Below are positions 1 through 63,808 of a stretch of DNA of 64,000 nt, piece after piece. The position numbers were made by a program, and so were the translations under genes. Numbering within the stretch: position 1 is the stretch's first letter; every line of letters starts with the position of its first letter. The stretch is from positions 1-64,000 of the IMG/VR virus record IMGVR_UViG_3300025009_000050. One strand, given 5' to 3'. The notes beneath the pieces are model-generated. The model made no database searches. It had not been told where the DNA came from and was given only the letters and a program-made list of their open reading frames with translations.

Positions 1-2
1 AA

Positions 3-548
3 AAAGCCATAGAAATATATAAGTCAGTACAAGAAATTGGAACTGGCAATTGTTCAACAATCATTGGAGAATCAATGTCATTGAGGATAGCCAGAATCAG
101 AGATATTCAACTCGTTGAAGCTGGTGTTCCATTAGACTTTGTCTTCTATGGACATGGATCAGGATATTATAAGCATCTTGAGCGTGATACTAATGGCTGG
201 GCTATGAAAACAGCCTATAGTAATGGTGCAGACAGAATGAAACTTAGTATGGATGAAATTAAACAATCAATTCCTGGATTAGTTGACATTACTTTTGATC
301 ACAGTAAGGATAATACAAACCTGATTGTAATTCCACGAGGAAGCTTGCACAAATATAAGGGGTGCGAGTTGTATCAAACTGTATATGAATGGAATCCGAG
401 TATGCATGTGCCTCACATAAAAACATTCGATTGGAATGATACAATGGCACTTGGTAGAATGCAGACTGGAGCTCAGGAGAGTATTATTCTTTCTGATGAA
501 ATTAAAGGTCTCATCAACAACTTCATTGCAAGATATGGAGGTATGTAG
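3..548 (+). CDS. Nicotinamide phosphoribosyltransferase (NAMPT/NadV-like), C-terminal part; gene starts before the window
   Basis: Frame is open from position 3 (KAIEIY...TIIGESM). FYGHGSGYYKHLERDTNGWAMK matches the NAMPT C-terminal FGxGGxL..xRDT..xAMK motif. Sits directly upstream of an NMN adenylyltransferase. Confidence 0.75.
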   Translation, partial: KAIEIYKSVQEIGTGNCSTIIGESMSLRIARIRDIQLVEAGVPLDFVFYGHGSGYYKHLERDTNGWAMKTAYSNGADRMKLSMDEIKQSIPGLVDITFDHSKDNTNLIVIPRGSLHKYKGCELYQTVYEWNPSMHVPHIKTFDWNDTMALGRMQTGAQESIILSDEIKGLINNFIARYGGM

Positions 549-549
549 C

Positions 550-1104
550 ATGGTATCAACTGGTTTCTGTATCGGTAGATTCCAACACTTTCACCTCCTG
601 CATGAGTCACTGGTACGTCCTGGTCTCACTTTATGCGATAAGTTTTTAGTTATTGTGGGATCTGCCGGTATTATACCTAATGAAAGAAATCCATTCCCCA
701 TAAATCTAAGGATTGAACTAATCCAGACGATCTTCAGTAATGAAGTTAGATCCGGTAAGCTGATGATAATGCCGTTAGCTGATCTAACAACTGAAGATGA
801 CATTTCAGAAGCATGGGGTAACTACTTGCTAACTGCAGCTAAATGCTTCCTGGGTGATACTCCTGGTATGTTTATATCAGGTAATGATGAACGCAGAGGC
901 GAATGGTTTAACCAAAATACAATTCCTTATACTCATCAGTTGATTGTGCCTAGACCACCTGGAGTACATGCTTCTGCTACAGATTTAAGGAAGATGTTAA
1001 TTGATAATAATGAATCTGAATGGAGAAAACATACAAATCCAAAGATTCATCATTATTATAATATCTTAAGGAAGGAGGTTCTGAGGTTAAGATTCGCTAG
1101 TTAA
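550..1104 (+). CDS. nadM: Nicotinamide-nucleotide adenylyltransferase (NadM-like, cytidylyltransferase fold)
   Basis: GRFQHFHLLH (GRFQPxHxGH-type HxxH motif), IVGSA, ERNPF, SAT(D)LRK. ATG at 550 directly follows the upstream stop, so the track start at 436 is too early. Confidence 0.85.
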   Translation: MVSTGFCIGRFQHFHLLHESLVRPGLTLCDKFLVIVGSAGIIPNERNPFPINLRIELIQTIFSNEVRSGKLMIMPLADLTTEDDISEAWGNYLLTAAKCFLGDTPGMFISGNDERRGEWFNQNTIPYTHQLIVPRPPGVHASATDLRKMLIDNNESEWRKHTNPKIHHYYNILRKEVLRLRFAS

Positions 1105-1686: not shown

Positions 1687-1839
1687 ATGGGACCGTGGCT
1701 GTTTATTGACTTCTTAATTGCCATACTAGTAATTATATCCTGTATCATAGGTTTAAAGAGATTCTTCGTTAAATTTGGAGGATGGGTTAGTAATCTTTTC
1801 TCCATGCCGGAAGACGAAGATAATAAAAAAGAGGAGTGA
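1687..1839 (+). CDS. Small membrane protein (50 aa)
   Basis: GGAGGTGAGGTG SD; MGPWLFIDFLIAILVIISCIIGLKRFF is a hydrophobic helix; precedes the SPFH gene. Confidence 0.6.
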   Translation: MGPWLFIDFLIAILVIISCIIGLKRFFVKFGGWVSNLFSMPEDEDNKKEE

Positions 1840-1843
1840 TCGT

Positions 1844-2740
1844 ATGCAATTATCAACACATGGTAAGTTTGTGCTTGGAGGTACCATAGGAGGTATATTA
1901 GCATTTGTAATTCTCGTTATTGCCATTATGTGTACAATCAGTATTTCCCCAGGACAAGTAGGTGTCCTGTATGATCGAGCTAAAGGCGGCGTACAAAAAG
2001 ATCCTCTACTTCAAGGCTTCCATGTTATAATGCCTATTAAACAATCAGTTCAAGAATACCCGGTAAGTACGCAAACTTTGGAATTAACTGCTTCTAAAAC
2101 AGAGGGTAGCCCAGAAGACGAATCTTGGTTAATACCCACTAAGGAAAACTTGAATGTGAATATTGACAGTTATTTATCCTATCATATTGAACCAGCTATG
2201 GCTCCCCACGTATACAATAAGTTTAGGGGCCGTGATATCCAGGACATTGCACAGACTTATATCCGTACCAACATGAAAAACATCGCCCAAAACTGCACCG
2301 GAACATACAGTGTACTTGGCATTGCAGGTGATCAGCGTGAAGAAGCTTGTAACTTAATCACAAATAATTTAAAAGAGTTCTTTGGACCGGATGGAATCGT
2401 TGTTGAAAGATTCAACTTCGGTGAAGTCAGATTACCAAGCAGCATTCAAGCTTCCGTAAATGATAAGATTAATTCTGCACAACAGGCTCAACAGGCAGAA
2501 CTTATTCTTAAGAAGAAAGAAATTGAAATTAAACAGGCTGTAGCAGAAGCTCAAGGCCGTGCTCAAGCTATGACAATTGATGCTAAAGCTCAAGCAGATG
2601 CCAACAGAATCATTGCTGAATCATTAACACCGTCCCTTGTACAGTTGAAAGCCATTGAGAAATTCAATGATAAAGTTAATGTTATGATGGTGCCGCCTGG
2701 TATGTCAGTACTCTCAGGTATGCCTGGCTTATTCAAATAA
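1844..2740 (+). CDS. SPFH/band-7 (prohibitin/flotillin-like) membrane protein
   Basis: N-terminal TM helix, ISPGQVGVLYDR..GG, LLQGFHVIMP, VVERFNFGEVRLP, and an AEAQGRAQA coiled-coil tail. GAGGAG SD before ATG 1844. Confidence 0.9.
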   Translation: MQLSTHGKFVLGGTIGGILAFVILVIAIMCTISISPGQVGVLYDRAKGGVQKDPLLQGFHVIMPIKQSVQEYPVSTQTLELTASKTEGSPEDESWLIPTKENLNVNIDSYLSYHIEPAMAPHVYNKFRGRDIQDIAQTYIRTNMKNIAQNCTGTYSVLGIAGDQREEACNLITNNLKEFFGPDGIVVERFNFGEVRLPSSIQASVNDKINSAQQAQQAELILKKKEIEIKQAVAEAQGRAQAMTIDAKAQADANRIIAESLTPSLVQLKAIEKFNDKVNVMMVPPGMSVLSGMPGLFK

Positions 2741-2746
2741 GATATC

Positions 2747-2760
2747 GCCCCTTCGGGGGC
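2747..2760 (+). terminator. GC hairpin with cUUCGg loop after the SPFH gene (terminator or stabilising hairpin)
   Basis: GCCCC-TTCG-GGGGC; no strong U-tract follows. Confidence 0.45.
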
Positions 2761-2764
2761 ATTA

Positions 2765-2815
2765 CGGGCTAGCTAGTGGACTAGTCAAAGTAGGTTCGAT
2801 TCCTACCACGGCCCG
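2765..2815 (+). ncRNA. Anticodon-less tRNA-like element
   Basis: Closing stem CGGGCT/GGCCCG, D-like hairpin CTAG-TGGA-CTAG, canonical T-arm GTAGG-TTCGATT-CCTAC; no anticodon arm. Confidence 0.55.
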
Positions 2816-2835
2816 CCCTGATTAAATCTAAGGAG

Positions 2836-3087
2836 GTGATTGTCATAATAGTAGGTTTTTGTTCTGTAACTAAATATGCATGCAATGTTTATATTCATGA
2901 TGAAGCAATCATAGTGATAGGACTCGTAGGAAGTGAATTTCCACAATTTGATTTTAAACTATTCGATATCAATTATAGGTGCGATATATTCATACCGAGA
3001 AATCCTGATGTGAAGTTTAAAGAATATCAAACTATACCATATGTAAGTGCAGTTCCGATGAAAACCTTATTAATGAACTATGGATAA
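2836..3087 (+). CDS. Hypothetical protein
   Basis: 83-aa ORF with a GGAGGTG SD; the true start may be ATA at 2845. Confidence 0.45.
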   Translation: MIVIIVGFCSVTKYACNVYIHDEAIIVIGLVGSEFPQFDFKLFDINYRCDIFIPRNPDVKFKEYQTIPYVSAVPMKTLLMNYG

Positions 3088-3144
3088 CTTTGCCCAGCTG
3101 TGAGGGCCAATCCAGCACTAATTTACTTATATACATTTAATTCA

Positions 3145-3185
3145 GGAGCGGATGGCAGATGACAAATAAGTCCAATACCGCTCCA
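3145..3185 (+). pseudogene. tRNA remnant (acceptor stem plus start of D-arm only)
   Basis: GGAGCGG/CCGCTCC 7-bp stem followed by A; begins GGAGCGGATGGCAGA like a type-II tRNA; the interior is deleted. Ends 5 nt before the tmRNA. Confidence 0.4.
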
Positions 3186-3190
3186 TTCAT

Positions 3191-3939
3191 GGGCGTACCG
3201 GGTTTCGACGGAGCGTGAGAGTAAAACTTGCCTAGAGGTTGGTTACCATATAACCACAAGGCTTTAAATGCCAAAACTACTCTTCAAGCTGCCTAGTCTC
3301 TAATTAACTTTAGAGCTGGGAGATCAGCCCCAAAACACCGAGCTTATCCCAGCAATCGGATGAGGGTCAAAGAATGGGAGAGTCCTATCGGAAACAGTAG
3401 TTCGGAAGGGCTACAGATAGGCAATAGGTCATAGAAGGCGAAAGCAATCGCTCTTTCCGGTTTAGGACTGACTAGTAAGGTACGTAGGAGAACTATGGGT
3501 CGTTCTCTGAAGACAACCTGGTAGAGTATTAGAAACTGGCCTCGCATACATTAGTGCAACCCTAACCCATTAAGGAGTCGCTAATGATAATATGGTGGTA
3601 GGTGGCCGAAATTCAGTCCATGTAGGGTTAAAATCCCTACTCTATGGCAAATAGTTTCTTGCATCCTAAATGCAAGTGGTGGAGGTTAATAAATATCACT
3701 GGTGGCAAATTGGCAAAGCGACACGTCGGCTCTATATGTAACTAAGTGAGCTTACGGGTGTCCACCCAGAGGTTACACGCTGAAGCGTGGCTGTTATTAC
3801 AGTTTGTAGGTTCGACTCCTACCCAGTGATGAAAGTGAGCAAGCTACTTAGTGCTGCCGTTGACCACGATGGTCTATTCTAGGTAGACGGTTTAGGGTAA
3901 CAGTTCCGGACGGGGGTTCAACTCCCCCTACGTCCACCA
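3191..3939 (+). ncRNA. ssrA: tmRNA (SsrA), 749 nt, interrupted by a ~400-nt insert
   Basis: Acceptor GGGCGTA/TACGTCC with G3-U70 and encoded ACCA; 5' motif GGTTTCGACGG; T-arm GGGGG-TTCAACT-CCCCC; tag ORF 3270-3296 AKTTLQAA* after TTAAAT; helix 2a CGGAGC/GTTCCG; helix 2c TTGCCTAG/CTAGGTAG; pk4-like GACTGACTA at 3466-3474. Confidence 0.92.
3696..3830 (+). ncRNA. Expanded tRNA-like element inside the tmRNA insert
   Basis: Acceptor TCACTGG/CCAGTGA; Leu/Ser-type D-arm TGGCAAATTGGCAAAGC; stem GACAC/GTGTC enclosing 33 nt; 43-nt variable region with two hairpins; T-arm GTAGG-TTCGACT-CCTAC; no CCA. Confidence 0.7.
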
Positions 3940-3968
3940 TAAAACAAATATAAAGGAAGAAGTATAAT

Positions 3969-5527
3969 ATGAAACCAATTACTTCACAAGAATGCCTTGC
4001 AGCTCTTAAGGAAGGTATAACAAAGTTCGGCACCTATGATTACTATGATAAAGGTGTAGACAGTGTAATGTTTATACCTCCATTGCTCGACAGGTTTAAA
4101 CAAATGTCAGCTAAAGATGTTCAGAAGGTATTGCTTGAGGTACTTGAATATGAGCATGGGAAACATTTTGTTGGATTTATACTAATGTGTCTTGAAGAAA
4201 TGCCTGATGCATATTGGGATGAATTAACGAATGATCCTAGTCTAAATAAGCTATTACTTTAATAAAGTAATAGCTTTATGAGGTGATACTATGCAATGGT
4301 GTCTAAGATGTAATACATTAAGGGAAGATCATGAAAAGTATTGCCCAACATGTGTAGCTAAACTTGAAGAAGGCAGACGCATATTATTAGATTCAATTCG
4401 TACAGCTACAGAACTTATCCCACCAGATTGTCTTGTGATCCGAATTTTAAGACAAATCAATATAGACATAATCAGTCTAAAGACTGGTAGACCCTGGAGA
4501 TACATATTGTGAGGTGATTAGTAATGCAAGTACAGATCATATCTTTAGTTGGTACCGATAAAGTTGTCCGTGAAGGATTGTTCACTCTTATTTCTCCTCA
4601 TCTTGAAGAAGCTACGGCTGAAGCAGAAAAGGTTCAGCTTGTTGATCCTTATGCTGGAACAACTAAGATGCCATACCATAGTAGAGAAAGTGTACTCAAA
4701 CTCAATAACATTTATGTAGGTGAGTATAGAGTTGATACAGGTGACCCTCCATATTGCAGTTATTATACAACATGCTTAATTCATGAGTTTATTAGTCAGA
4801 TAATATTTACTAAGGAAGATAAGAAGCATTATCACACTATTGAAGCTGGCGAAGTTCATGAGGAAAAGTATATCTACGTTATTACACCAAAATAGTAGGA
4901 GGTGACGAATTGTTAAGTAACGTCTCCTTAAGTAACTTTATCTTCTGCGTAATTAATGAACCTGAAGCCAGTAACGGGTTTTTTATAATTATTAATACTC
5001 AGAAGTGTTGGAGTAATGATCATATTATTACTGATCATTATACTGACGAAGAATGGGATGTTCTCAGACCAGTTCTTTCAAAATATAACCTTATAGATAC
5101 AATGGAGTCTATTTATGAAAGCAATATGAGATTTACTCCTGATAAAATGACCCAGCTTTTACTTGCTGAAGGCTTGCAGCAGGATAGTTTATTCACTCAA
5201 TGGTGCAAAACAATCCCGTCATTTTATTAGCGCTCCTCTTACAAGAGAATAAGAACATAAGAAGGTGTATCATGCCAGTACTATTCTGGGGTTATATAAT
5301 CACAGTAGTTGTATTGTGGGTATTATGTAATTACTTTTAGGAGGTACTATATGTTAAGAGTAACTACTGATGAGAAAGAATTTACCGGAGTAAGTAGAGT
5401 AATAGTGTGTGATGATGGTTCACATCGTAATCCAAGGACTAATCTTCTTATAGAATTTACTAATAGTAGTGATACTGTTACTTTAACAGTAAATTCTATA
5501 TCAGATATTATAATAGATACGAAATAA
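3969..5527 (+). other. Run of small hypothetical ORFs (3969-4262, 4291-4512, 4524-4895, 4910-5230, ~5351-5527)
   Basis: Tightly packed ORFs with SD sites; 4291-4512 has a CxxC...CxxC motif; no function recognisable. Confidence 0.55.
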
Positions 5528-5558: not shown

Positions 5559-6782
5559 ATGATTATCAAAGGTAAGCATAATACTGCAGAAGTGTTTACA
5601 GACAATGTTGACGCGCAAACTATATCTCAAATAATTGAATTATGTAATCAGGAATTTACGATTGGTAGTTCAATTAAGATTATGCCGGATTGTCATAAAG
5701 GTGCTGGATGTACCATAGGAACTACAATGACAATAAAGAATAAGATCGTTCCTAACTTAGTTGGTGTGGACATATCCTGCGGCATGCTTGTTGTTGAGTT
5801 AGGTAATATAGATATTGATCTAAAGAATTTCGATGATTATATCACTAATAACATTCCAAGCGGTTATAACATCAATGTCTTATCAAAGTGTGATTTCAAA
5901 GATCAAATTAATAAATTACTTTGTATTAGAGGTATCAGTAAGATCGCCAAAGATTTTAATAAAGCTCTGGGTAGCCTTGGTGGTGGGAATCACTTCATCG
6001 AGATTAATGTGGATAGCCAAGATAATAAATATTTAGTCATACATAGTGGAAGTAGGAACCTTGGTAAGCAAGTAGCAGAATACTACCAGGGCAGTGCTTA
6101 CGGATACCATAGTGGATTCAACGATGATTATGAAGCTATGAAGATTGCTCTAATCAAAGGATACAAAGCAGTTGGTAAGGAACATAAAATACAAAAAGCT
6201 CTGAAGGTTCTTCAGCAAGAGTGCAAGAAAGCCTGTAGTATACCTAAGGATCTGTGTTATCTAGAAGGCACCTTAATGCAAGAATATCTTCATGATGTGG
6301 CCATTATACAGCAATATGCTAGTTTAAATAGAATGACCATGGCTAGAAGAATAGTGGAGGAATGCTTAGGATTAAGATACCGTGAGCTGGATTCCTTTCA
6401 AACAATACATAATTACATTGACCTGGAGCATATGATACTTCGCAAAGGTGCTGTATCTGCTCAGTTAGGAGAAAAATTAATCATTCCCATTAACATGCGT
6501 GATGGCAGCATCATTGCTATAGGTAAGGGAAACCCTGATTGGAATTTCTCAGCTCCTCATGGTGCAGGACGTCTAATGAGTAGGTCCCAAGCTAAAAAGA
6601 ACATTGATATGAATGATTATGTCCTAACCATGAAAGGCATCTATACTTCATCAGTTACTGAATCTACCATAGATGAAGCTCCTATGGCTTATAAGCCCAT
6701 AGAGGAGATCATCGAGAACACAGGTGATACTATAGAAATAGTTAACATCATTAAGCCCATATATAACTTTAAATCAAGCTAG
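5559..6782 (+). CDS. rtcB: RtcB-family RNA ligase
   Basis: MPDCHKGAGCTIG, VGVDISCGM, LGGGNHFIE, IHSGSRNLG, HNY, RKGA, SAPHGAGR, DEAPMAYK. Confidence 0.95.
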   Translation: MIIKGKHNTAEVFTDNVDAQTISQIIELCNQEFTIGSSIKIMPDCHKGAGCTIGTTMTIKNKIVPNLVGVDISCGMLVVELGNIDIDLKNFDDYITNNIPSGYNINVLSKCDFKDQINKLLCIRGISKIAKDFNKALGSLGGGNHFIEINVDSQDNKYLVIHSGSRNLGKQVAEYYQGSAYGYHSGFNDDYEAMKIALIKGYKAVGKEHKIQKALKVLQQECKKACSIPKDLCYLEGTLMQEYLHDVAIIQQYASLNRMTMARRIVEECLGLRYRELDSFQTIHNYIDLEHMILRKGAVSAQLGEKLIIPINMRDGSIIAIGKGNPDWNFSAPHGAGRLMSRSQAKKNIDMNDYVLTMKGIYTSSVTESTIDEAPMAYKPIEEIIENTGDTIEIVNIIKPIYNFKSS

Positions 6783-20339: not shown

Positions 20340-20765
20340 ATGAATAACGTAGTCTTTGTCCGTCTACCACACGGATCACTAACTGAACTTTACTTAAAAC
20401 TTGATCTTGCCAAAGAACTAGGTGGCTCTGTAAAATTTATGTTCTACAGAGCCACATGTCGCATGGCAATCATAGTAGATAACAATGAATGCAATGAATT
20501 TGTAAGTGTGATTACTGGATTGGAGGATGATGAAGATTCATTAAGATTCATAGAATTTATAAGAAAACACACACTATCAATCAGCAAAGATCAAATCATA
20601 GGCTTACTTCATCCGAATGAATGGTGTGCACGCAAAGGGGAAAGCGTAGAGAGAGATCTCATAATACTGAATGAGATTTCCACTGAGTTTAGTATACCAA
20701 TAATTCCACTCAGTGATACTAGACGTGAACTCTTGGAGGTGTACCATAATGGTATCCATACGTGA
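20340..20765 (+). CDS. Hypothetical protein
   Basis: 141-aa ORF. Confidence 0.5.
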   Translation: MNNVVFVRLPHGSLTELYLKLDLAKELGGSVKFMFYRATCRMAIIVDNNECNEFVSVITGLEDDEDSLRFIEFIRKHTLSISKDQIIGLLHPNEWCARKGESVERDLIILNEISTEFSIPIIPLSDTRRELLEVYHNGIHT

Positions 20766-21495
20766 TGTAAGCTTTACTATCCCAAATGAACTTAGAATTG
20801 TTATAAATCTTCTTAATCTGTACTCATTGCCAAACGGAGATCCATACTCAATAGTCGGTGGTTACATCAGAGACTTAATTCTTGATGGTAACCCTCGTGA
20901 TATTGATATTTGTTATTATGAACGATCACTTCTAGATAGTTATATAATAAGAAATAATCAAATCCGTTATGAGCAGGTTAGGAATAAAACGATACAATAC
21001 CTTTTATTCCACGGGATTGAAATACCTATTGATTGGGTACCATGTAATACATTACTGCCATACCCACCTAGATTTGACTTTACAATTAATGAGGTGGCTT
21101 TATTCCCTGATGGAAGATTAATAGCCTGCCCTCAAACATGGCTTGATCTTGAAACAAGAATTCTAAGATTAAGGGAGGAAAAAAATCCAACAACCAACAT
21201 AGTGTTAAGGGCTTGTAGATTCATAGTAACCTGTAACTTGAAACCTTGTAATAGTACAGTAAAAGCAATTAAAGAAGCTATGGTTAATAAAAAATTAAAC
21301 CAGATTACTCTTACTAATCAGTTACAAAATGCTGAAAATACTGGTATACTATATGAAGTATTTGAGTTAATGAGATTCTTCAATATCCCTATAAATGGTT
21401 TTAAGAGTGGCATCTCACTCCTTGAATACCTACTAGACAAGGAAAGAAATAGCCATCTTGATATAGGAGATGAAGAGTACAATGAAATATACTAG
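20749..21495 (+). CDS. Class II nucleotidyltransferase (CCA-adding/poly(A) polymerase family), divergent
   Basis: IVGGYIRDLILDGNPRDIDI (motif A), FDFTIN, LRACRF. Confidence 0.8.
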   Translation: MVSIRDVSFTIPNELRIVINLLNLYSLPNGDPYSIVGGYIRDLILDGNPRDIDICYYERSLLDSYIIRNNQIRYEQVRNKTIQYLLFHGIEIPIDWVPCNTLLPYPPRFDFTINEVALFPDGRLIACPQTWLDLETRILRLREEKNPTTNIVLRACRFIVTCNLKPCNSTVKAIKEAMVNKKLNQITLTNQLQNAENTGILYEVFELMRFFNIPINGFKSGISLLEYLLDKERNSHLDIGDEEYNEIY

Positions 21496-59371: not shown

Positions 59372-59939
59372 TTATTGAAAACTATATAAAAACTGATACT
59401 AAACTCATATGTACTGATGATTTTATTTCATCTCGTATAACTGGATGTAAAAAGTTATTTACCAGGGATAAAATGTACGATGTCTACAGGCATGAATATA
59501 ACAACTCGCTTTATACACAGGATGATACTGGATATATAGCACTACTTACGTTTGGATACTCACATGAATATGCATATCGTGGTTTTGTAGTGAAGCATTT
59601 TATACTTGTACATAACATAAATATCTTAGATGAGGTAATAGAATGTATCAGATAGATCAACTTGTTATAATCAAAGATAATGGCGAAAGGTATCCTTACC
59701 ACCATACTTTAGCTGGAGAATTAGGTTATCCGAATGCAGTGATAGATTTCTATGACCATACTGTTAATGACAAGGATACTAATATTCCTAATGGAACAGT
59801 CTGTTATGTATTAGCTAAAGGAATGAAGAAGGAGCATCCTTGTAAAATATGTTATATAGTTTGCTCTCCGAAATTAGATAGAACGATATTGATCGGAGGG
59901 AAAGGTTTGCGCCATATACTTGATGATGAAATAAATTTA

Positions 59940-60042
59940 TGATGTTGCTGGTAGCATAGTAACGGTTCGAATCCGTTAACCGAGAGATAAAATCTAAAGG
60001 TGGCTGGTGCCAAATCTTAGAGGTTCGATTCCTTAGACGTCA
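59940..60042 (+). ncRNA. Tandem anticodon-less tRNA-elbow modules
   Basis: TGATGTT/GACGTCA closing stem; two GG-containing mini-hairpins, each followed by a T-arm (AACGG-TTCGAAT-CCGTT and GAGG-TTCGATT-CCTT). Confidence 0.5.
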
Positions 60043-60121
60043 TAATAAATTGGTGAAGTTGGGTTAGTGTAGGCTATAGACTACCTATCCTTCCTTCACC
60101 TCCGAAAATTAAATAGGGGAG

Positions 60122-60667
60122 ATGATAGTTTTGTTTGGTTTATTAGCATGGTGGAGGAATAGAAGGATTAAGTCTCATACAGAGACAATCATTAGGGATT
60201 TGAATGAGGATCTCAGGGATTTTGATCGTAAGGTTGAGAACCAACTGAATATCTTCAAGCGCATTGTCACTAAGATTAATAAAATCAACAGCAAGATTGA
60301 TAGCAGAATTGTAGTTGCTAGGTCTCAGATTACTGATCTTAATGATCTGGTAGTTAATCTTGAAAGTTCTAGGGCTGCTAACGAGAAAGTTAAGACTAGG
60401 TTCGAAGAGATGGTAATGTAAATGAACTTTGGTATTGACGATTTGGTTCCTAAGTGGATCTTATACCCATTAGCTTATATCTTCGGCATAATATTACTTC
60501 CGATTGGCATAGTATTAGTGCTAGTATACGGAAGAGGCAGAAGTACTACACTATGGACAGACCTACTATATCCAGGAACTTTAGTAGCTTGTGTAACATC
60601 AACGTTAATATTGTGTTTGGTATATCCAATATTCAAGCTAAAGAATATAATTACTAAAAACACTTGA
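60122..60667 (+). other. Coiled-coil membrane-anchored protein (60122-60421) and two-TM protein (60422-60667)
   Basis: Hydrophobic segments; coupled ORFs. Confidence 0.55.
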
Positions 60668-60692
60668 AATTGAATCATAAATGTGGTAAAAT
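60664..60692 (+). promoter_or_regulatory. SigmaA-type promoter
   Basis: TTGAAA-17 nt-TAAAAT with TG extension. Confidence 0.65.
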
Positions 60693-60979
60693 ATCTTTGT
60701 TAGGGATGCATAGTGTGAGCGGTTCAACCTGGCGAACAGAGGACAGGTGTAGTGGATCAAACACGAATCAATTTGATACGTAATACACATTAAATTAATA
60801 GGAACAACATGGTTCTTACAAGAAGAAAACTTATTATCTAAACAAAGTATAAGTTATACTTCACTGTTCCTTAGTTACACTTACTTATTCATACTGAGCA
60901 TACATCACACTTCAAATACTGTAGTACATTCTTTGTACAAAAATAAATTGCTCCGTGTGCAAACTTAACATAAAATATA

Positions 60980-61483
60980 ATGCTTCCGACAAAGTATTAT
61001 CACGAATGCCCTGACATAATGTCAGGGCATTATGAATATGGAGGTTCTATAGTGGAAATGGAATGGGAAAATGAACTACCTCATTTCGAATGGTTCGATA
61101 AAGATATGCATTGTATTATACATAGAAATCCTAGAATGAAAAATCTTAATGGTTATGTAGGAGTTAAGCCCAATCATCCACTACATAGAGTTTCTCATAT
61201 TGATGATTACAGTAAAACTGATAGTCTTCAATGTCATGGTGGCATTACATATTCAGAGGAAGGGCCACACATAGAAGGTATGCTTAAGGGCTACTGGTAC
61301 TTTGGTTTTGATACAGCTCATTCCTTTGATTACGTACCAGGTCTTATTGAAATCGCTAATAAAGTATCAGAGAGATTTCCAATGATTCCTTTACCAATAG
61401 AAGATGAAAAAGTATACAGAAACTTTGAATATGTGATGGATGAAGTTAAACAACTTGCTAAACAGCTTAAGGAAATTAAATAA
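60980..61483 (+). CDS. Conserved phage hypothetical protein
   Basis: NGYVGV...HP...CHGGITYS...W.FGFDTAH..D, a motif of a common phage family. Confidence 0.65.
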   Translation: MLPTKYYHECPDIMSGHYEYGGSIVEMEWENELPHFEWFDKDMHCIIHRNPRMKNLNGYVGVKPNHPLHRVSHIDDYSKTDSLQCHGGITYSEEGPHIEGMLKGYWYFGFDTAHSFDYVPGLIEIANKVSERFPMIPLPIEDEKVYRNFEYVMDEVKQLAKQLKEIK

Positions 61484-63512: not shown

Positions 63513-63734
63513 AGGGGAATCATTCAATTGATTTAAAAACCGCCATTAGAAACATTTACCCATTGAAAACTAAATATGGTGATGTAGTTCATACCATTAA
63601 GAAAGACAATGGTTACTGGCTACAGATCAAAGGTGGATATTTAATAGAAGTACCGGAAGAAAACTTTACTAAGATTAGTAATGATCTTAGAGAATTTATT
63701 GCTAAGCAATTATAGGCGGTTATACCGCCTACAT

Positions 63735-63808
63735 GTGGTAGTAGTTCAACGGTAGAACAACGGCTTCCAACACCGTAGATTTGGGTCCAATTCCTAACTA
63801 CCATGCCA
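63735..63808 (+). tRNA. tRNA-Trp(CCA) with atypical T-loop and anticodon-stem mismatch
   Basis: Acceptor GTGGTAG/CTACCAT plus G73 CCA; D-arm TAGTTCAACGGTAGAAC; ACGGC-TT CCA AC-ACCGT; T-loop TCCAATT. Confidence 0.8.

What the first reader, a model, noticed from the sequence alone, without database searches (positions are those of the whole stretch)
2765..2815. Anticodon-less mini-tRNA (D-like loop plus T-arm plus acceptor-like stem)
Seen: a 51-nt element keeps the GG of a D-like loop, a perfect T-arm and a closing stem but has no anticodon arm. It follows a cUUCGg hairpin. The same design recurs at ~3596-3647 and twice at 59940-60042. Inference: repeated retention of just the elbow argues for selection rather than random decay. 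Possible roles are RNase P/Z punctuation signals or decoys for elbow-binding host proteins.
Basis: partly seen in the sequence, partly recalled or inferred. Interest (0 to 1): 0.6.

Follow-up and report, generated by a model that had tools for sequence, protein, structure and literature searches.

The report
Anticodon-less tRNA stump in jumbo phage
A 51-base leftover of a tRNA gene, with a T arm, one small hairpin and a short closing stem but no anticodon, sits where a tRNA would sit in a 244-kb groundwater phage rich in other tRNA-shaped RNAs. It may still serve as an RNA-cutting signal, but nothing yet shows it is more than a relic.

Summary
Element A (2765-2815) is real and far beyond chance. 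It has a fully canonical T arm, a 5-bp hairpin with a UGGA loop and a 6-bp closing stem, and it lies 4 nt after a cUUCGg hairpin.

It is tRNA-derived. Its 3' half matches the 3' end of a T5-like phage tRNA-Asn and one of the phage's own Y-RNA-like genes. It occupies the same "leader hairpin + 3-4 nt" slot as three genuine tRNAs.

It cannot decode. It also lacks the U(-1) found in 15 of the 16 genuine tRNA-type genes of this phage and the encoded N-CCA found in all 16.

The claimed recurrences are not the same design:
- 3596-3647 is a weak look-alike inside a previously uncalled 749-nt tmRNA gene (3191-3939).
- 59940-60042 is one 104-nt unit closed by a single 8-bp stem, not two closed minis.

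No relatives and no RNA data exist, so selection versus decay cannot be settled. My best guess (0.45) is a tRNA stump that still works as a tRNA-shaped processing signal. An inert relic is nearly as likely (0.35).

The surroundings are more interesting than the element itself: the giant tmRNA, Ro60 with four YrlA-type RNAs, RtcB, and a covarying family of long tRNA-framed RNAs shared with Streptomyces phages.

The parts
1775..2740 (+). SPFH/Band-7 (prohibitin-like) gene directly upstream of the element
   Evidence: Pfam Band_7, E 2.8e-25. Gene calls on identical contigs agree.
2747..2760 (+). c(UUCG)g leader hairpin: 5 G-C pairs, ending 4 nt before element A
   Evidence: It is one of four GC-rich hairpins that end 3-4 nt before a tRNA-type 5' end; about 0.06 are expected by chance.
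2765..2815 (+). Element A, an anticodon-less tRNA-derived three-way junction. Closing stem 2765-2770/2810-2815, UGGA-loop hairpin 2772-2785, canonical T arm 2790-2806.
   Evidence: Fold. Descriptor statistics. Only the T arm scores with the Rfam tRNA model, at 12.8 bits. ARAGORN finds nothing even when relaxed. The 3' half resembles a T5-like tRNA-Asn 3' end and the phage's own YrlA-like gene.
2830..3087 (+). Shine-Dalgarno sequence (2830-2836) and an 83-aa ORFan gene directly downstream
   Evidence: Codon-usage score is +0.245 in frame and -0.97/-0.69 out of frame, like real genes. No homologue among 5.8 billion proteins.
3191..3939 (+). 749-nt tmRNA gene: G3:U70 acceptor stem, tag frame 3270-3296 (AKTTLQAA*), encoded ACCA
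   Evidence: Rfam tmRNA partial hit on the 3' domain, 29.6 bits, E 9.5e-10. In 253 internal-deletion constructs of at most 420 nt, ARAGORN calls the same ends and tag. The centroid fold closes the tRNA-like domain.
3596..3647 (+).
   Evidence: (z -1.2).
3696..3829 (+). Domain C: a closed tRNA-framed domain (perfect 7-bp acceptor-like stem directly next to a canonical T arm, no CCA) nested inside the tmRNA gene
5559..6782 (+). RtcB RNA ligase gene
   Evidence: phrog_1075, E 1.7e-133. PF01139 on the identical contig.
59939..60043 (+). One RNA-like unit closed by an 8-bp stem. In order it holds a UGG-loop hairpin, T arm 1 (59960-59978, 6 bp), a weak hairpin, a second UGG-loop hairpin (60002-60011) and T arm 2 (60019-60035, one A.A mismatch). 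No CCA.
   Evidence: (z -2.2). No Rfam hit. No similar DNA in 50,697 phage records. It begins on the TGA stop of ORF 59643-59942.
63713..63808 (+). Comparison module: an 8-bp leader hairpin (63713-63731), 3 nt, then genuine tRNA-Trp (63735-63808) between two ORFs

Best explanation
Element A is the stump of a tRNA gene that once occupied, and still occupies, a tRNA slot in a long co-directional transcription unit: gene stop, leader hairpin, 4 nt, tRNA-shaped RNA, Shine-Dalgarno of the next gene. It lost its decoding part. It kept the T arm, the first four pairs of the acceptor stem (lengthened by a -1/73 pair and a G-U) and one short UGG-loop hairpin.

It cannot decode and is very unlikely to be charged. 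If it still works, the most likely way is in cis. The stacked closing stem and T arm (11 bp against 12 in a tRNA) would present a tRNA-like helix to the host's tRNA end-processing enzymes, RNase P on the 5' side and perhaps RNase Z or exonucleases on the 3' side. The polycistronic RNA would then be cut between the SPFH gene and the downstream ORF/tmRNA block, leaving the upstream mRNA capped by the UUCG hairpin.

Shown: the structure, the tRNA ancestry and the slot. Inferred: any cleavage and any benefit.
For: Structure and significance.

tRNA ancestry:
- About 29 of 31 bases (93.5%; T arm, following strand and discriminator) match a T5-like phage tRNA-Asn 3' end. The differences include one extra C after the T stem and CCC in place of CCA.
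- 22 of 24 bases match the T arm and acceptor-like strand of the phage's own YrlA-like gene at genome 67223.

Slot:
- GC-rich hairpins end 3-4 nt before A, tRNA-Trp, tRNA-Asn and tRNA-Met. That is 4 of 20 tRNA-type starts, against about 0.06 expected from 133 such hairpins in 244 kb.
- The same arrangement precedes the E-type RNA in Streptomyces phage Moab.
- tRNA-Trp sits between two ORFs exactly as A does.

Integrity: all 16 pairs in the three helices and the whole T loop are intact, despite several length changes relative to a tRNA.

Context:
- The flanking ORFs are real and tightly spaced.
- The phage demonstrably reuses the tRNA frame for non-decoding RNAs.

Precedent: plant mitochondrial t-elements carry the same GGTTCRANYCC motif and direct RNase P/Z cuts at mRNA ends (PMC1920247).
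Against: - 15 of the phage's 16 genuine tRNA-type genes (14 tRNAs, the tmRNA and E) have U at -1, and all 16 encode N-CCA. A has A (or C) at -1 and CCC/CCU at the 3' side.
- The closing stem is 5-6 bp, not 7, and three unpaired bases separate it from the T stem.
- Thermodynamic support is modest: z about -1.8, with 9-11 of 200 shuffles folding as well.
- The nearest relatives by the SPFH protein (57-59% identity) have only a plain hairpin or nothing after that gene.
- No second locus has the complete design.
- No RNA data exist.
- Two of the three genuine leader hairpins lie between tRNAs, not after an ORF. The idea that the hairpin caps an mRNA 3' end is therefore an inference.
Confidence: 0.45

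Rival explanations
1. Inert relic. A is a decaying tRNA pseudogene that has not yet been deleted. Its hairpin, position and closing stem are inherited from the tRNA that used to be there, and it does nothing today.
For: - Several lesions relative to a tRNA: loss of the decoding part, a shortened 5' acceptor strand, an extra base after the T stem, and CCA turned into CCC.
- No U(-1) and no CCA, unlike the genuine genes.
- Four of the closing pairs are simply ancestral acceptor pairs 1-72 to 4-69.
- Absent after the SPFH gene in the nearest relatives found.
- The genome holds other odd tRNA derivatives, such as a tRNA with a 6-nt anticodon loop.
- tRNA gene fragments are common in prokaryotes (PMC9897764, listed).
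Against: - After three or more length changes one would expect point changes as well. Yet all 16 pairs and all 7 T-loop bases are intact.
- The phage genome is compact, and A fills the whole gap between two real genes.
- A second anticodon-less arrangement (D) is closed by a clean 8-bp stem.
Confidence: 0.35
2. Trans-acting elbow module. A (and D) are released as small stable RNAs that present a tRNA elbow or T arm to a protein. They could act as a decoy for a host tRNA-binding or tRNA-cleaving factor, or as a free version of the tRNA-like effector module of the phage's YrlA-type Y RNAs.
For: - The phage encodes Ro60 (TROVE 117 bits plus vWA_Ro60) with four YrlA-type RNAs, and RtcB.
- A's T arm and next strand are 22/24 identical to one YrlA-like gene.
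- A equals a YrlA tRNA-like module opened at the acceptor-like loop and closed where the Ro60-binding stem would start.
- YrlA modules are substrates of tRNA enzymes (PMC4201824).
Against: - No YrlA model hit at A or D even at E<=10.
- The order of arms differs: hairpin then T arm, not T arm - acceptor-like hairpin - D arm.
- A is 64 kb from Ro60, whereas known Y RNAs lie within 2 kb of it.
- With a 4-nt loop the GG can hardly reach the T loop, so a true elbow is doubtful (inference).
- No processing hallmarks.
Confidence: 0.1
3. Cis-regulatory leader. The structure controls translation or stability of the downstream 83-aa ORF, or folding of the tmRNA precursor, rather than acting as a cleavage signal.
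For: - A ends 14 nt before a strong Shine-Dalgarno sequence.
- The bases after the T arm can pair weakly with the Shine-Dalgarno region (5 of 7, by eye).
- The tmRNA gene starts 376 nt downstream.
Against: - The pairing with the Shine-Dalgarno has two central mismatches.
- There is no anti-Shine-Dalgarno run in A.
- There are no conserved relatives to test with.
- No riboswitch or leader family matches.
Confidence: 0.06
4. Chance resemblance with no tRNA ancestry.
For: None beyond the modest folding z-score.
Against: - 0.13 strict T arms are expected per shuffled genome.
- The full descriptor never appears in 30 shuffles.
- There is sequence similarity to real tRNA 3' ends.
Confidence: 0.01

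Closest known systems
t-elements of plant mitochondria (tRNA-like processing signals; Forner et al. 2007, PMC1920247)
   Same: - Non-canonical, non-decoding tRNA-like folds recognised by the GGTTCRANYCC T-arm motif.
- Located next to protein genes in polycistronic RNA.
- Proposed, and partly shown, to direct RNase P/Z cuts that create mRNA ends.
   Different: - They are organellar, not phage.
- Their ends were mapped experimentally, whereas here nothing is mapped.
- A is smaller and has a 3-nt spacer between the T stem and the closing stem.
tRNA gene fragments / pseudo-tRNAs in prokaryotic and phage genomes (PMC9897764, listed)
   Same: Partial tRNA sequence with a recognisable T arm and acceptor strand, not callable as a tRNA.
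   Different: Typical fragments are 3' or 5' halves left by integration or recombination. A keeps both ends, pairs them, and has lost only the middle.
YrlA-type bacterial and phage Y RNAs (Rfam RF02553; Chen et al. 2014, PMC4201824)
   Same: - A non-decoding tRNA mimic built from a T arm, a D-like arm and an acceptor-like stem.
- Present in this very phage next to Ro60.
- Shares 22/24 bases with A's T arm region.
   Different: - YrlA has the order T arm - closed acceptor-like hairpin - D arm inside a long Ro60-binding stem, and lies within 2 kb of Ro60.
- A has the opposite topology and no Ro60-binding stem.
- A has no model hit and lies 64 kb away.
MALAT1/mascRNA-type 3'-end module (from memory, not tested here)
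   Same: A stabilising structure directly upstream of a tRNA-like element. RNase P cleavage at that element would create the protected 3' end of the upstream RNA.
   Different: - Eukaryotic.
- mascRNA keeps a cloverleaf with a reduced anticodon arm and receives CCA.
- The stabiliser is a triple helix, not a UUCG hairpin.
Armless mitochondrial tRNAs of nematodes and mites (from memory)
   Same: Similar size (42-55 nt) and loss of one canonical arm.
   Different: They always keep a 7-nt anticodon loop and decode. A has a 4-nt loop.

Membership tests
canonical tRNA (Rfam RF00005) | Model score at or above 29 bits, or an ARAGORN call | tested here: not met
   Only the T arm aligns, at 12.8 bits. 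ARAGORN finds nothing, even with relaxed score and introns allowed.
canonical tRNA (Rfam RF00005) | Anticodon arm with a 7-nt loop | tested here: not met
   The only hairpin between the closing stem and the T arm has a 4-nt loop, UGGA.
canonical tRNA (Rfam RF00005) | T arm: 5 bp with G53:C61 and a UUCRANY loop | tested here: met
   2790-2806.
canonical tRNA (Rfam RF00005) | 7-bp acceptor stem stacked directly on the T stem, then discriminator and CCA (encoded in all tRNAs of this phage) | tested here: not met
   5-6 bp, three unpaired bases before it, and CCC/CCU in place of CCA.
YrlA Y RNA-like (Rfam RF02553) | Covariance-model match; arm order T arm - acceptor-like hairpin - D arm within a long outer stem | tested here: not met
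   No hit at E<=10 over 2600-4200 or 59700-60300. The same search finds two copies next to Ro60, at 39 and 42.9 bits.
YrlA Y RNA-like (Rfam RF02553) | Encoded close to (within about 2 kb of) a Ro60/TROVE gene | tested here: not met
   Ro60 is at genome 67425-69041 and A is at 2765. The criterion comes from PMC4201824.
tmRNA tRNA-like domain | G3:U70 acceptor pair, encoded or added CCA, tag reading frame | tested here: not met
   A has none of these. The neighbouring gene 3191-3939 has all three.
t-element-type tRNA-like processing signal | GGTTCRANYCC motif within a non-canonical tRNA-like fold that has an acceptor-like stem | tested here: met
   Definition from PMC1920247.
t-element-type tRNA-like processing signal | Transcript ends coincide with the borders of the element; cleavage by RNase P/Z | not testable with these tools
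   No listed RNA run holds the stretch: three tiny SOLiD metatranscriptomes with share 0.00.
tRNA gene fragment / pseudogene | Sequence similarity to part of a real tRNA, with disabling lesions | tested here: met
   3' half against a T5-like tRNA-Asn, with one inserted base and CCA changed to CCC. Decoding part missing.
tRNA gene fragment / pseudogene | No function (neutral decay) | not testable with these tools
   Identical contigs from other samples show no difference across this region; the only mismatch in 5.7 kb is at window position 3. No moderately diverged relative exists.

The most novel reading that the evidence does not exclude
A and D are selected, released 'elbow-only' RNAs. They would form a phage-specific class of anticodon-less tRNA mimics that either punctuate polycistronic RNA or titrate a host factor that reads the T arm or elbow. 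They would be part of a wider tRNA-mimic toolkit in this phage: giant tmRNA, Ro60/YrlA, RtcB and E-type RNAs.
Probability: 0.12. Interest if true: 0.7.

Novelty: new variant of a known kind. Interest (0 to 1): 0.4.

Why it matters
If A is cut by RNase P, phages would use stripped-down tRNA shapes as punctuation in the way plant mitochondria use t-elements. Tools that look for whole cloverleaves would then be missing a class of processing signals.

If A is inert, it is a clean snapshot of how phage tRNA slots decay.

Either way, the check exposed a phage with an unusually rich set of tRNA mimics that standard annotation missed. That set is the more valuable lead.

Tried and rejected
Searches for relatives, all without a usable result:
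- blastn of 2400-4400 against 50,697 phage records found nothing.
- Exact or degenerate patterns of A and of the tmRNA 3' end found nothing in IMG/VR.
- The tmRNA 3' end found nothing in 185k cellular genomes (one search failed because the machine was busy).
- A locus search with the SPFH protein found nothing.
- DNA polymerase relatives reach only 34% identity.
- SPFH homologues at 57-59% identity sit on short contigs without the element and without synteny downstream.
- The ORFs flanking A and D are ORFans.
- Identical contigs from other samples carry no variation.

RNA evidence: only three tiny metatranscriptomes from the same study were listed, and none holds the stretch.

Ideas rejected:
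- A long-range 7-bp partner (GGCCGTG at 2555 or 2228) for the 7 bases after A's T arm. It lies inside the SPFH coding sequence with no D arm after it, so I take it as chance.
- Intron-containing tRNA readings of C and E. ARAGORN's intron mode gives inconsistent anticodons (Ile versus Thr) and intron sites.
- A, or the hairpin before it, as an intrinsic terminator. There is no U tract on the + strand.
- Promoter scans, which were at or below shuffle level.

MAFFT alignment of A to whole tRNAs is ambiguous about whether the small hairpin is D-arm or anticodon-arm derived.

I did not build a covariance model of A, D1 and D2. With three short sequences dominated by the T arm it would mainly re-find tRNAs.

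Full report
WHERE WE ARE. The window is the first 64 kb of a 244,052-bp virus record with 37.4% G+C, rated complete. It comes from groundwater metagenomes. Near-identical contigs occur in several samples.

It is a jumbo phage. It has a family-B-type DNA polymerase, helicases, a primase, a UvsX-like recombinase, NrdD and ThyX. No close relative exists in any collection searched. ARAGORN finds 14 tRNAs, two of them in the window.

THE ELEMENT.
- A closing stem of five Watson-Crick pairs plus one G-U (2765-2770 with 2810-2815).
- One unpaired base.
- A 5-bp hairpin with loop UGGA (2772-2785).
- A 4-nt linker.
- A T arm that is canonical in every position: five Watson-Crick pairs ending in G53:C61, loop UUCGAUU (2790-2806).
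- Three unpaired bases, then the 3' strand of the closing stem.

A c(UUCG)g hairpin with five G-C pairs lies at 2747-2760. The element fills the gap between the stop of an SPFH/Band-7 gene and the Shine-Dalgarno of an 83-aa ORF. That ORF has gene-like codon usage but no homologue anywhere.

Chance is excluded. Shuffled genomes give 0.13 strict T arms against 17 observed, and they never give the full three-helix descriptor, which the real genome shows once, at A. The thermodynamic z-score alone is modest, at -1.8 to -1.9.

IT IS tRNA-DERIVED. Three lines of evidence point the same way.
- The last 31 bases of A are 93.5% identical to the 3' end of the tRNA-Asn of T5-like phages: end of the variable region, T arm, 3' acceptor strand and discriminator G. 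Among the differences, A has one extra C after the T stem and CCC where the tRNA has CCA.
- The T arm plus the next seven bases are 22/24 identical to one of the phage's own YrlA-type genes.
- The 5' part resembles the 5' end and D arm of the phage's tRNA-Pro. A whole-length alignment is ambiguous, however, and the small hairpin could equally be a shrunken anticodon arm: 5-bp stem, 4-nt 'variable' linker.

On the tRNA-Asn reading, four of the six closing pairs are simply ancestral acceptor pairs 1-72 to 4-69. Retention of a 'closing stem' therefore needs no special explanation.

IT SITS IN A tRNA SLOT. The genome has 133 perfect GC-rich hairpins. Four of them end 3-4 nt before a tRNA-type 5' end: A, tRNA-Trp, tRNA-Asn and tRNA-Met. 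About 0.06 would be expected for the 20 starts examined.

tRNA-Trp (63735-63808) lies between two ORFs behind such a hairpin, exactly as A does. The same arrangement (a UUCG hairpin, 3 nt, then a tRNA-framed RNA) is seen in Streptomyces phage Moab. The slot is equally well explained by inheritance from a former tRNA and by retained use.

WHAT A LACKS. Of the 16 genuine tRNA-type genes of the phage (14 tRNAs, the tmRNA and RNA E), 15 have U at position -1 and all 16 encode N-CCA. A has neither. C and D also lack CCA, and D's -1 depends on which register is taken. A's closing stem is shorter than seven pairs and is separated from the T stem by three bases.

These points count against an optimised RNase P substrate. 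The two helices still add up to 11 bp, close to the 12 bp that RNase P measures. Counting 12 would put the cut after U2763. That last step is inference only.

THE CLAIMED RECURRENCES. They do not show one repeated design.

(i) 3596-3647 (B) can be drawn as a three-way junction. Its T-like loop is UUAAAAU, and its fold is matched by 28 of 200 shuffles. It also lies inside a tmRNA gene that no tool had called.
- The 5' end at 3191 pairs with the 3' end at 3939 through a 7-bp stem with the G3:U70 alanine mark.
- Next comes the usual UUCGACGG-type stretch and a resume site.
- The tag frame at 3270-3296 encodes AKTTLQAA-stop.
- A helix covers the stop codon.
- The 3' domain, with encoded ACCA, matches the Rfam tmRNA model (29.6 bits, E 9.5e-10).
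- In 253 internal-deletion constructs of at most 420 nt, ARAGORN calls the same ends and tag. It was missed only because the gene is 749 nt long.
- Inside it lies a second, much cleaner tRNA-framed domain, C (3696-3829): a perfect 7-bp stem directly next to a canonical T arm.

(ii) 59940-60042 (D) does contain two [UGG-loop hairpin, 3-6 nt, T arm] pairs. Neither is closed on its own. One 8-bp stem (59939-59946 with 60036-60043) closes a single 104-nt unit, stacked on a second T stem that carries an A.A mismatch. D starts on the stop codon of the upstream ORF, has no CCA, and has no Rfam match and no relative.

So the motif 'short UGG-loop hairpin next to a T arm' occurs three times outside real tRNAs. 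The complete design occurs once.

THE WIDER PICTURE. The phage reuses the tRNA frame on a large scale.
- It encodes Ro60 (TROVE 117 bits plus the Ro60 vWA domain).
- Directly upstream of Ro60 lie three YrlA-type RNAs, and a fourth look-alike lies at 237 kb. Two hit Rfam YrlA at 39 and 42.9 bits, below the gathering score but at E about 1e-7. The other two show the same architecture on folding: outer stem, T arm, closed acceptor-like hairpin, D arm.
- RtcB lies in the window.
- Several long RNAs are framed by a 7-bp acceptor-like stem next to a T(-like) arm: C, E (genome 64769-64934, with a canonical D arm and ACCA), F, G and H.
- E has homologues in Streptomyces phages Comrade, Moab and Alone3. 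Nineteen of 36 predicted pairs covary. It is in no Rfam family, and its core pattern is absent from 185k cellular genomes.

Non-decoding tRNA-shaped RNAs under selection therefore exist in this genome. That raises the prior that A and D are used. It does not show that they are.

WEIGHING.
- For function: perfect helices and T loop despite several length changes, a compact genome, the slot, and the phage's habit of reusing the frame.
- For relic: the lesions themselves, the missing -1 U and CCA, the non-canonical junction, absence in the only (distant) relatives of the locus, and a single complete instance.
- No covariation or expression data can be had.

My estimates are as follows:

| Explanation | Probability |
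|---|---|
| tRNA stump that still acts in cis as a tRNA-shaped processing signal | about 0.45 |
| Inert relic | 0.35 |
| Released elbow or decoy module, possibly linked to the Ro60/YrlA system | 0.10 |
| Leader for the downstream ORF | 0.06 |
| Chance | about 0.01 |

COMPARISON WITH KNOWN SYSTEMS. In mode of action the closest are the t-elements of plant mitochondria (PMC1920247) and, from memory, the MALAT1/mascRNA 3'-end module. In origin it is a tRNA gene fragment.

It is not a tRNA, not a YrlA RNA and not a tmRNA domain, because defining features of each were tested and not met (see the membership table). An anticodon-less, both-ends-paired mini element in a phage is, to my knowledge, not described. 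I therefore rate it a new variant of a known kind, of moderate interest. The by-products rank higher.

No alternative genetic code was used.

Noticed in passing
window 3191-3939: A 749-nt tmRNA gene, about twice the usual length, missed by ARAGORN and Rfam only because of its size. Tag is AKTTLQAA*, with a G3:U70 pair and encoded ACCA. It contains a closed tRNA-framed domain (3696-3829). The phage has no SmpB. Whether it stays in one piece or is cut at the internal tRNA-like domain into a non-permuted two-piece tmRNA is open.
   Followed up: partly
genome 66745-69041 (L012 2745-5041) and genome ~237020-237130 (L013): A Ro60/TROVE+vWA gene (genome 67425-69041) preceded by three YrlA-type Y RNAs (about 66.75, 67.05 and 67.2 kb), with a fourth look-alike at 237 kb. 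Two hit RF02553 at 39-43 bits, below the gathering score of 69. This is a known kind (mycobacteriophages), here in a groundwater jumbo phage that also carries RtcB (window 5559-6782).
   Followed up: partly
genome 64769-64934 (L012 769-934); L014 1498-1652; L016 198-387; L017 195-349; also L019 7535-7613: 'E-type' RNA: 155-190 nt, with a tRNA acceptor stem, D arm and T arm around a roughly 80-110-nt structured insert with a conserved AAAACGGA loop. It is shared with Streptomyces phages, unannotated in those records, and absent from Rfam. 19 of 36 pairs covary. The core pattern is absent from 185k cellular genomes. It looks like an undescribed phage RNA family.
   Followed up: partly
genome 65446-65651, ~65833-66024, ~66036-66236 (L012 1446-2236): Three more ~190-206-nt RNAs, each closed by a 7-bp acceptor-like stem next to a T-like hairpin with an off-consensus loop (UGCAAAU, UUUGAAU, UACAAAU). 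They lie between genuine tRNAs, and one ends in G-CCA.
   Followed up: no
genome 72712-72784 (L012 8712-8784): An otherwise perfect tRNA with encoded CCA but a 6-nt anticodon loop. ARAGORN calls it tRNA-?(Val|Cys)(ac).
   Followed up: no
window 2747-2760, 63713-63731; genome 70344-70368, 70612-70634: GC-rich leader hairpins end 3-4 nt before tRNA-type 5' ends far more often than chance (4 observed, about 0.06 expected). In addition, 15 of 16 tRNA-type genes have U at -1, mostly as AU.
   Followed up: yes
window 60690-61050: About 360 nt without an ORF, behind a promoter-like site (60664-60692, 10/12 with TG) and ending in a 12-bp hairpin (61005-61031). Possibly another non-coding RNA.
   Followed up: no
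window 1-1104 and upstream on the identical contig (L003 1-2261): An NAD-related cluster just upstream: a Macro domain, a NAPRTase-like protein and a cytidylyltransferase-like protein. Separately, ORF 20713-21495 has a weak nucleotidyltransferase (PolyA_pol head) match at 21 bits, below the cut-off. It might be a CCA-adding-type enzyme.
   Followed up: no
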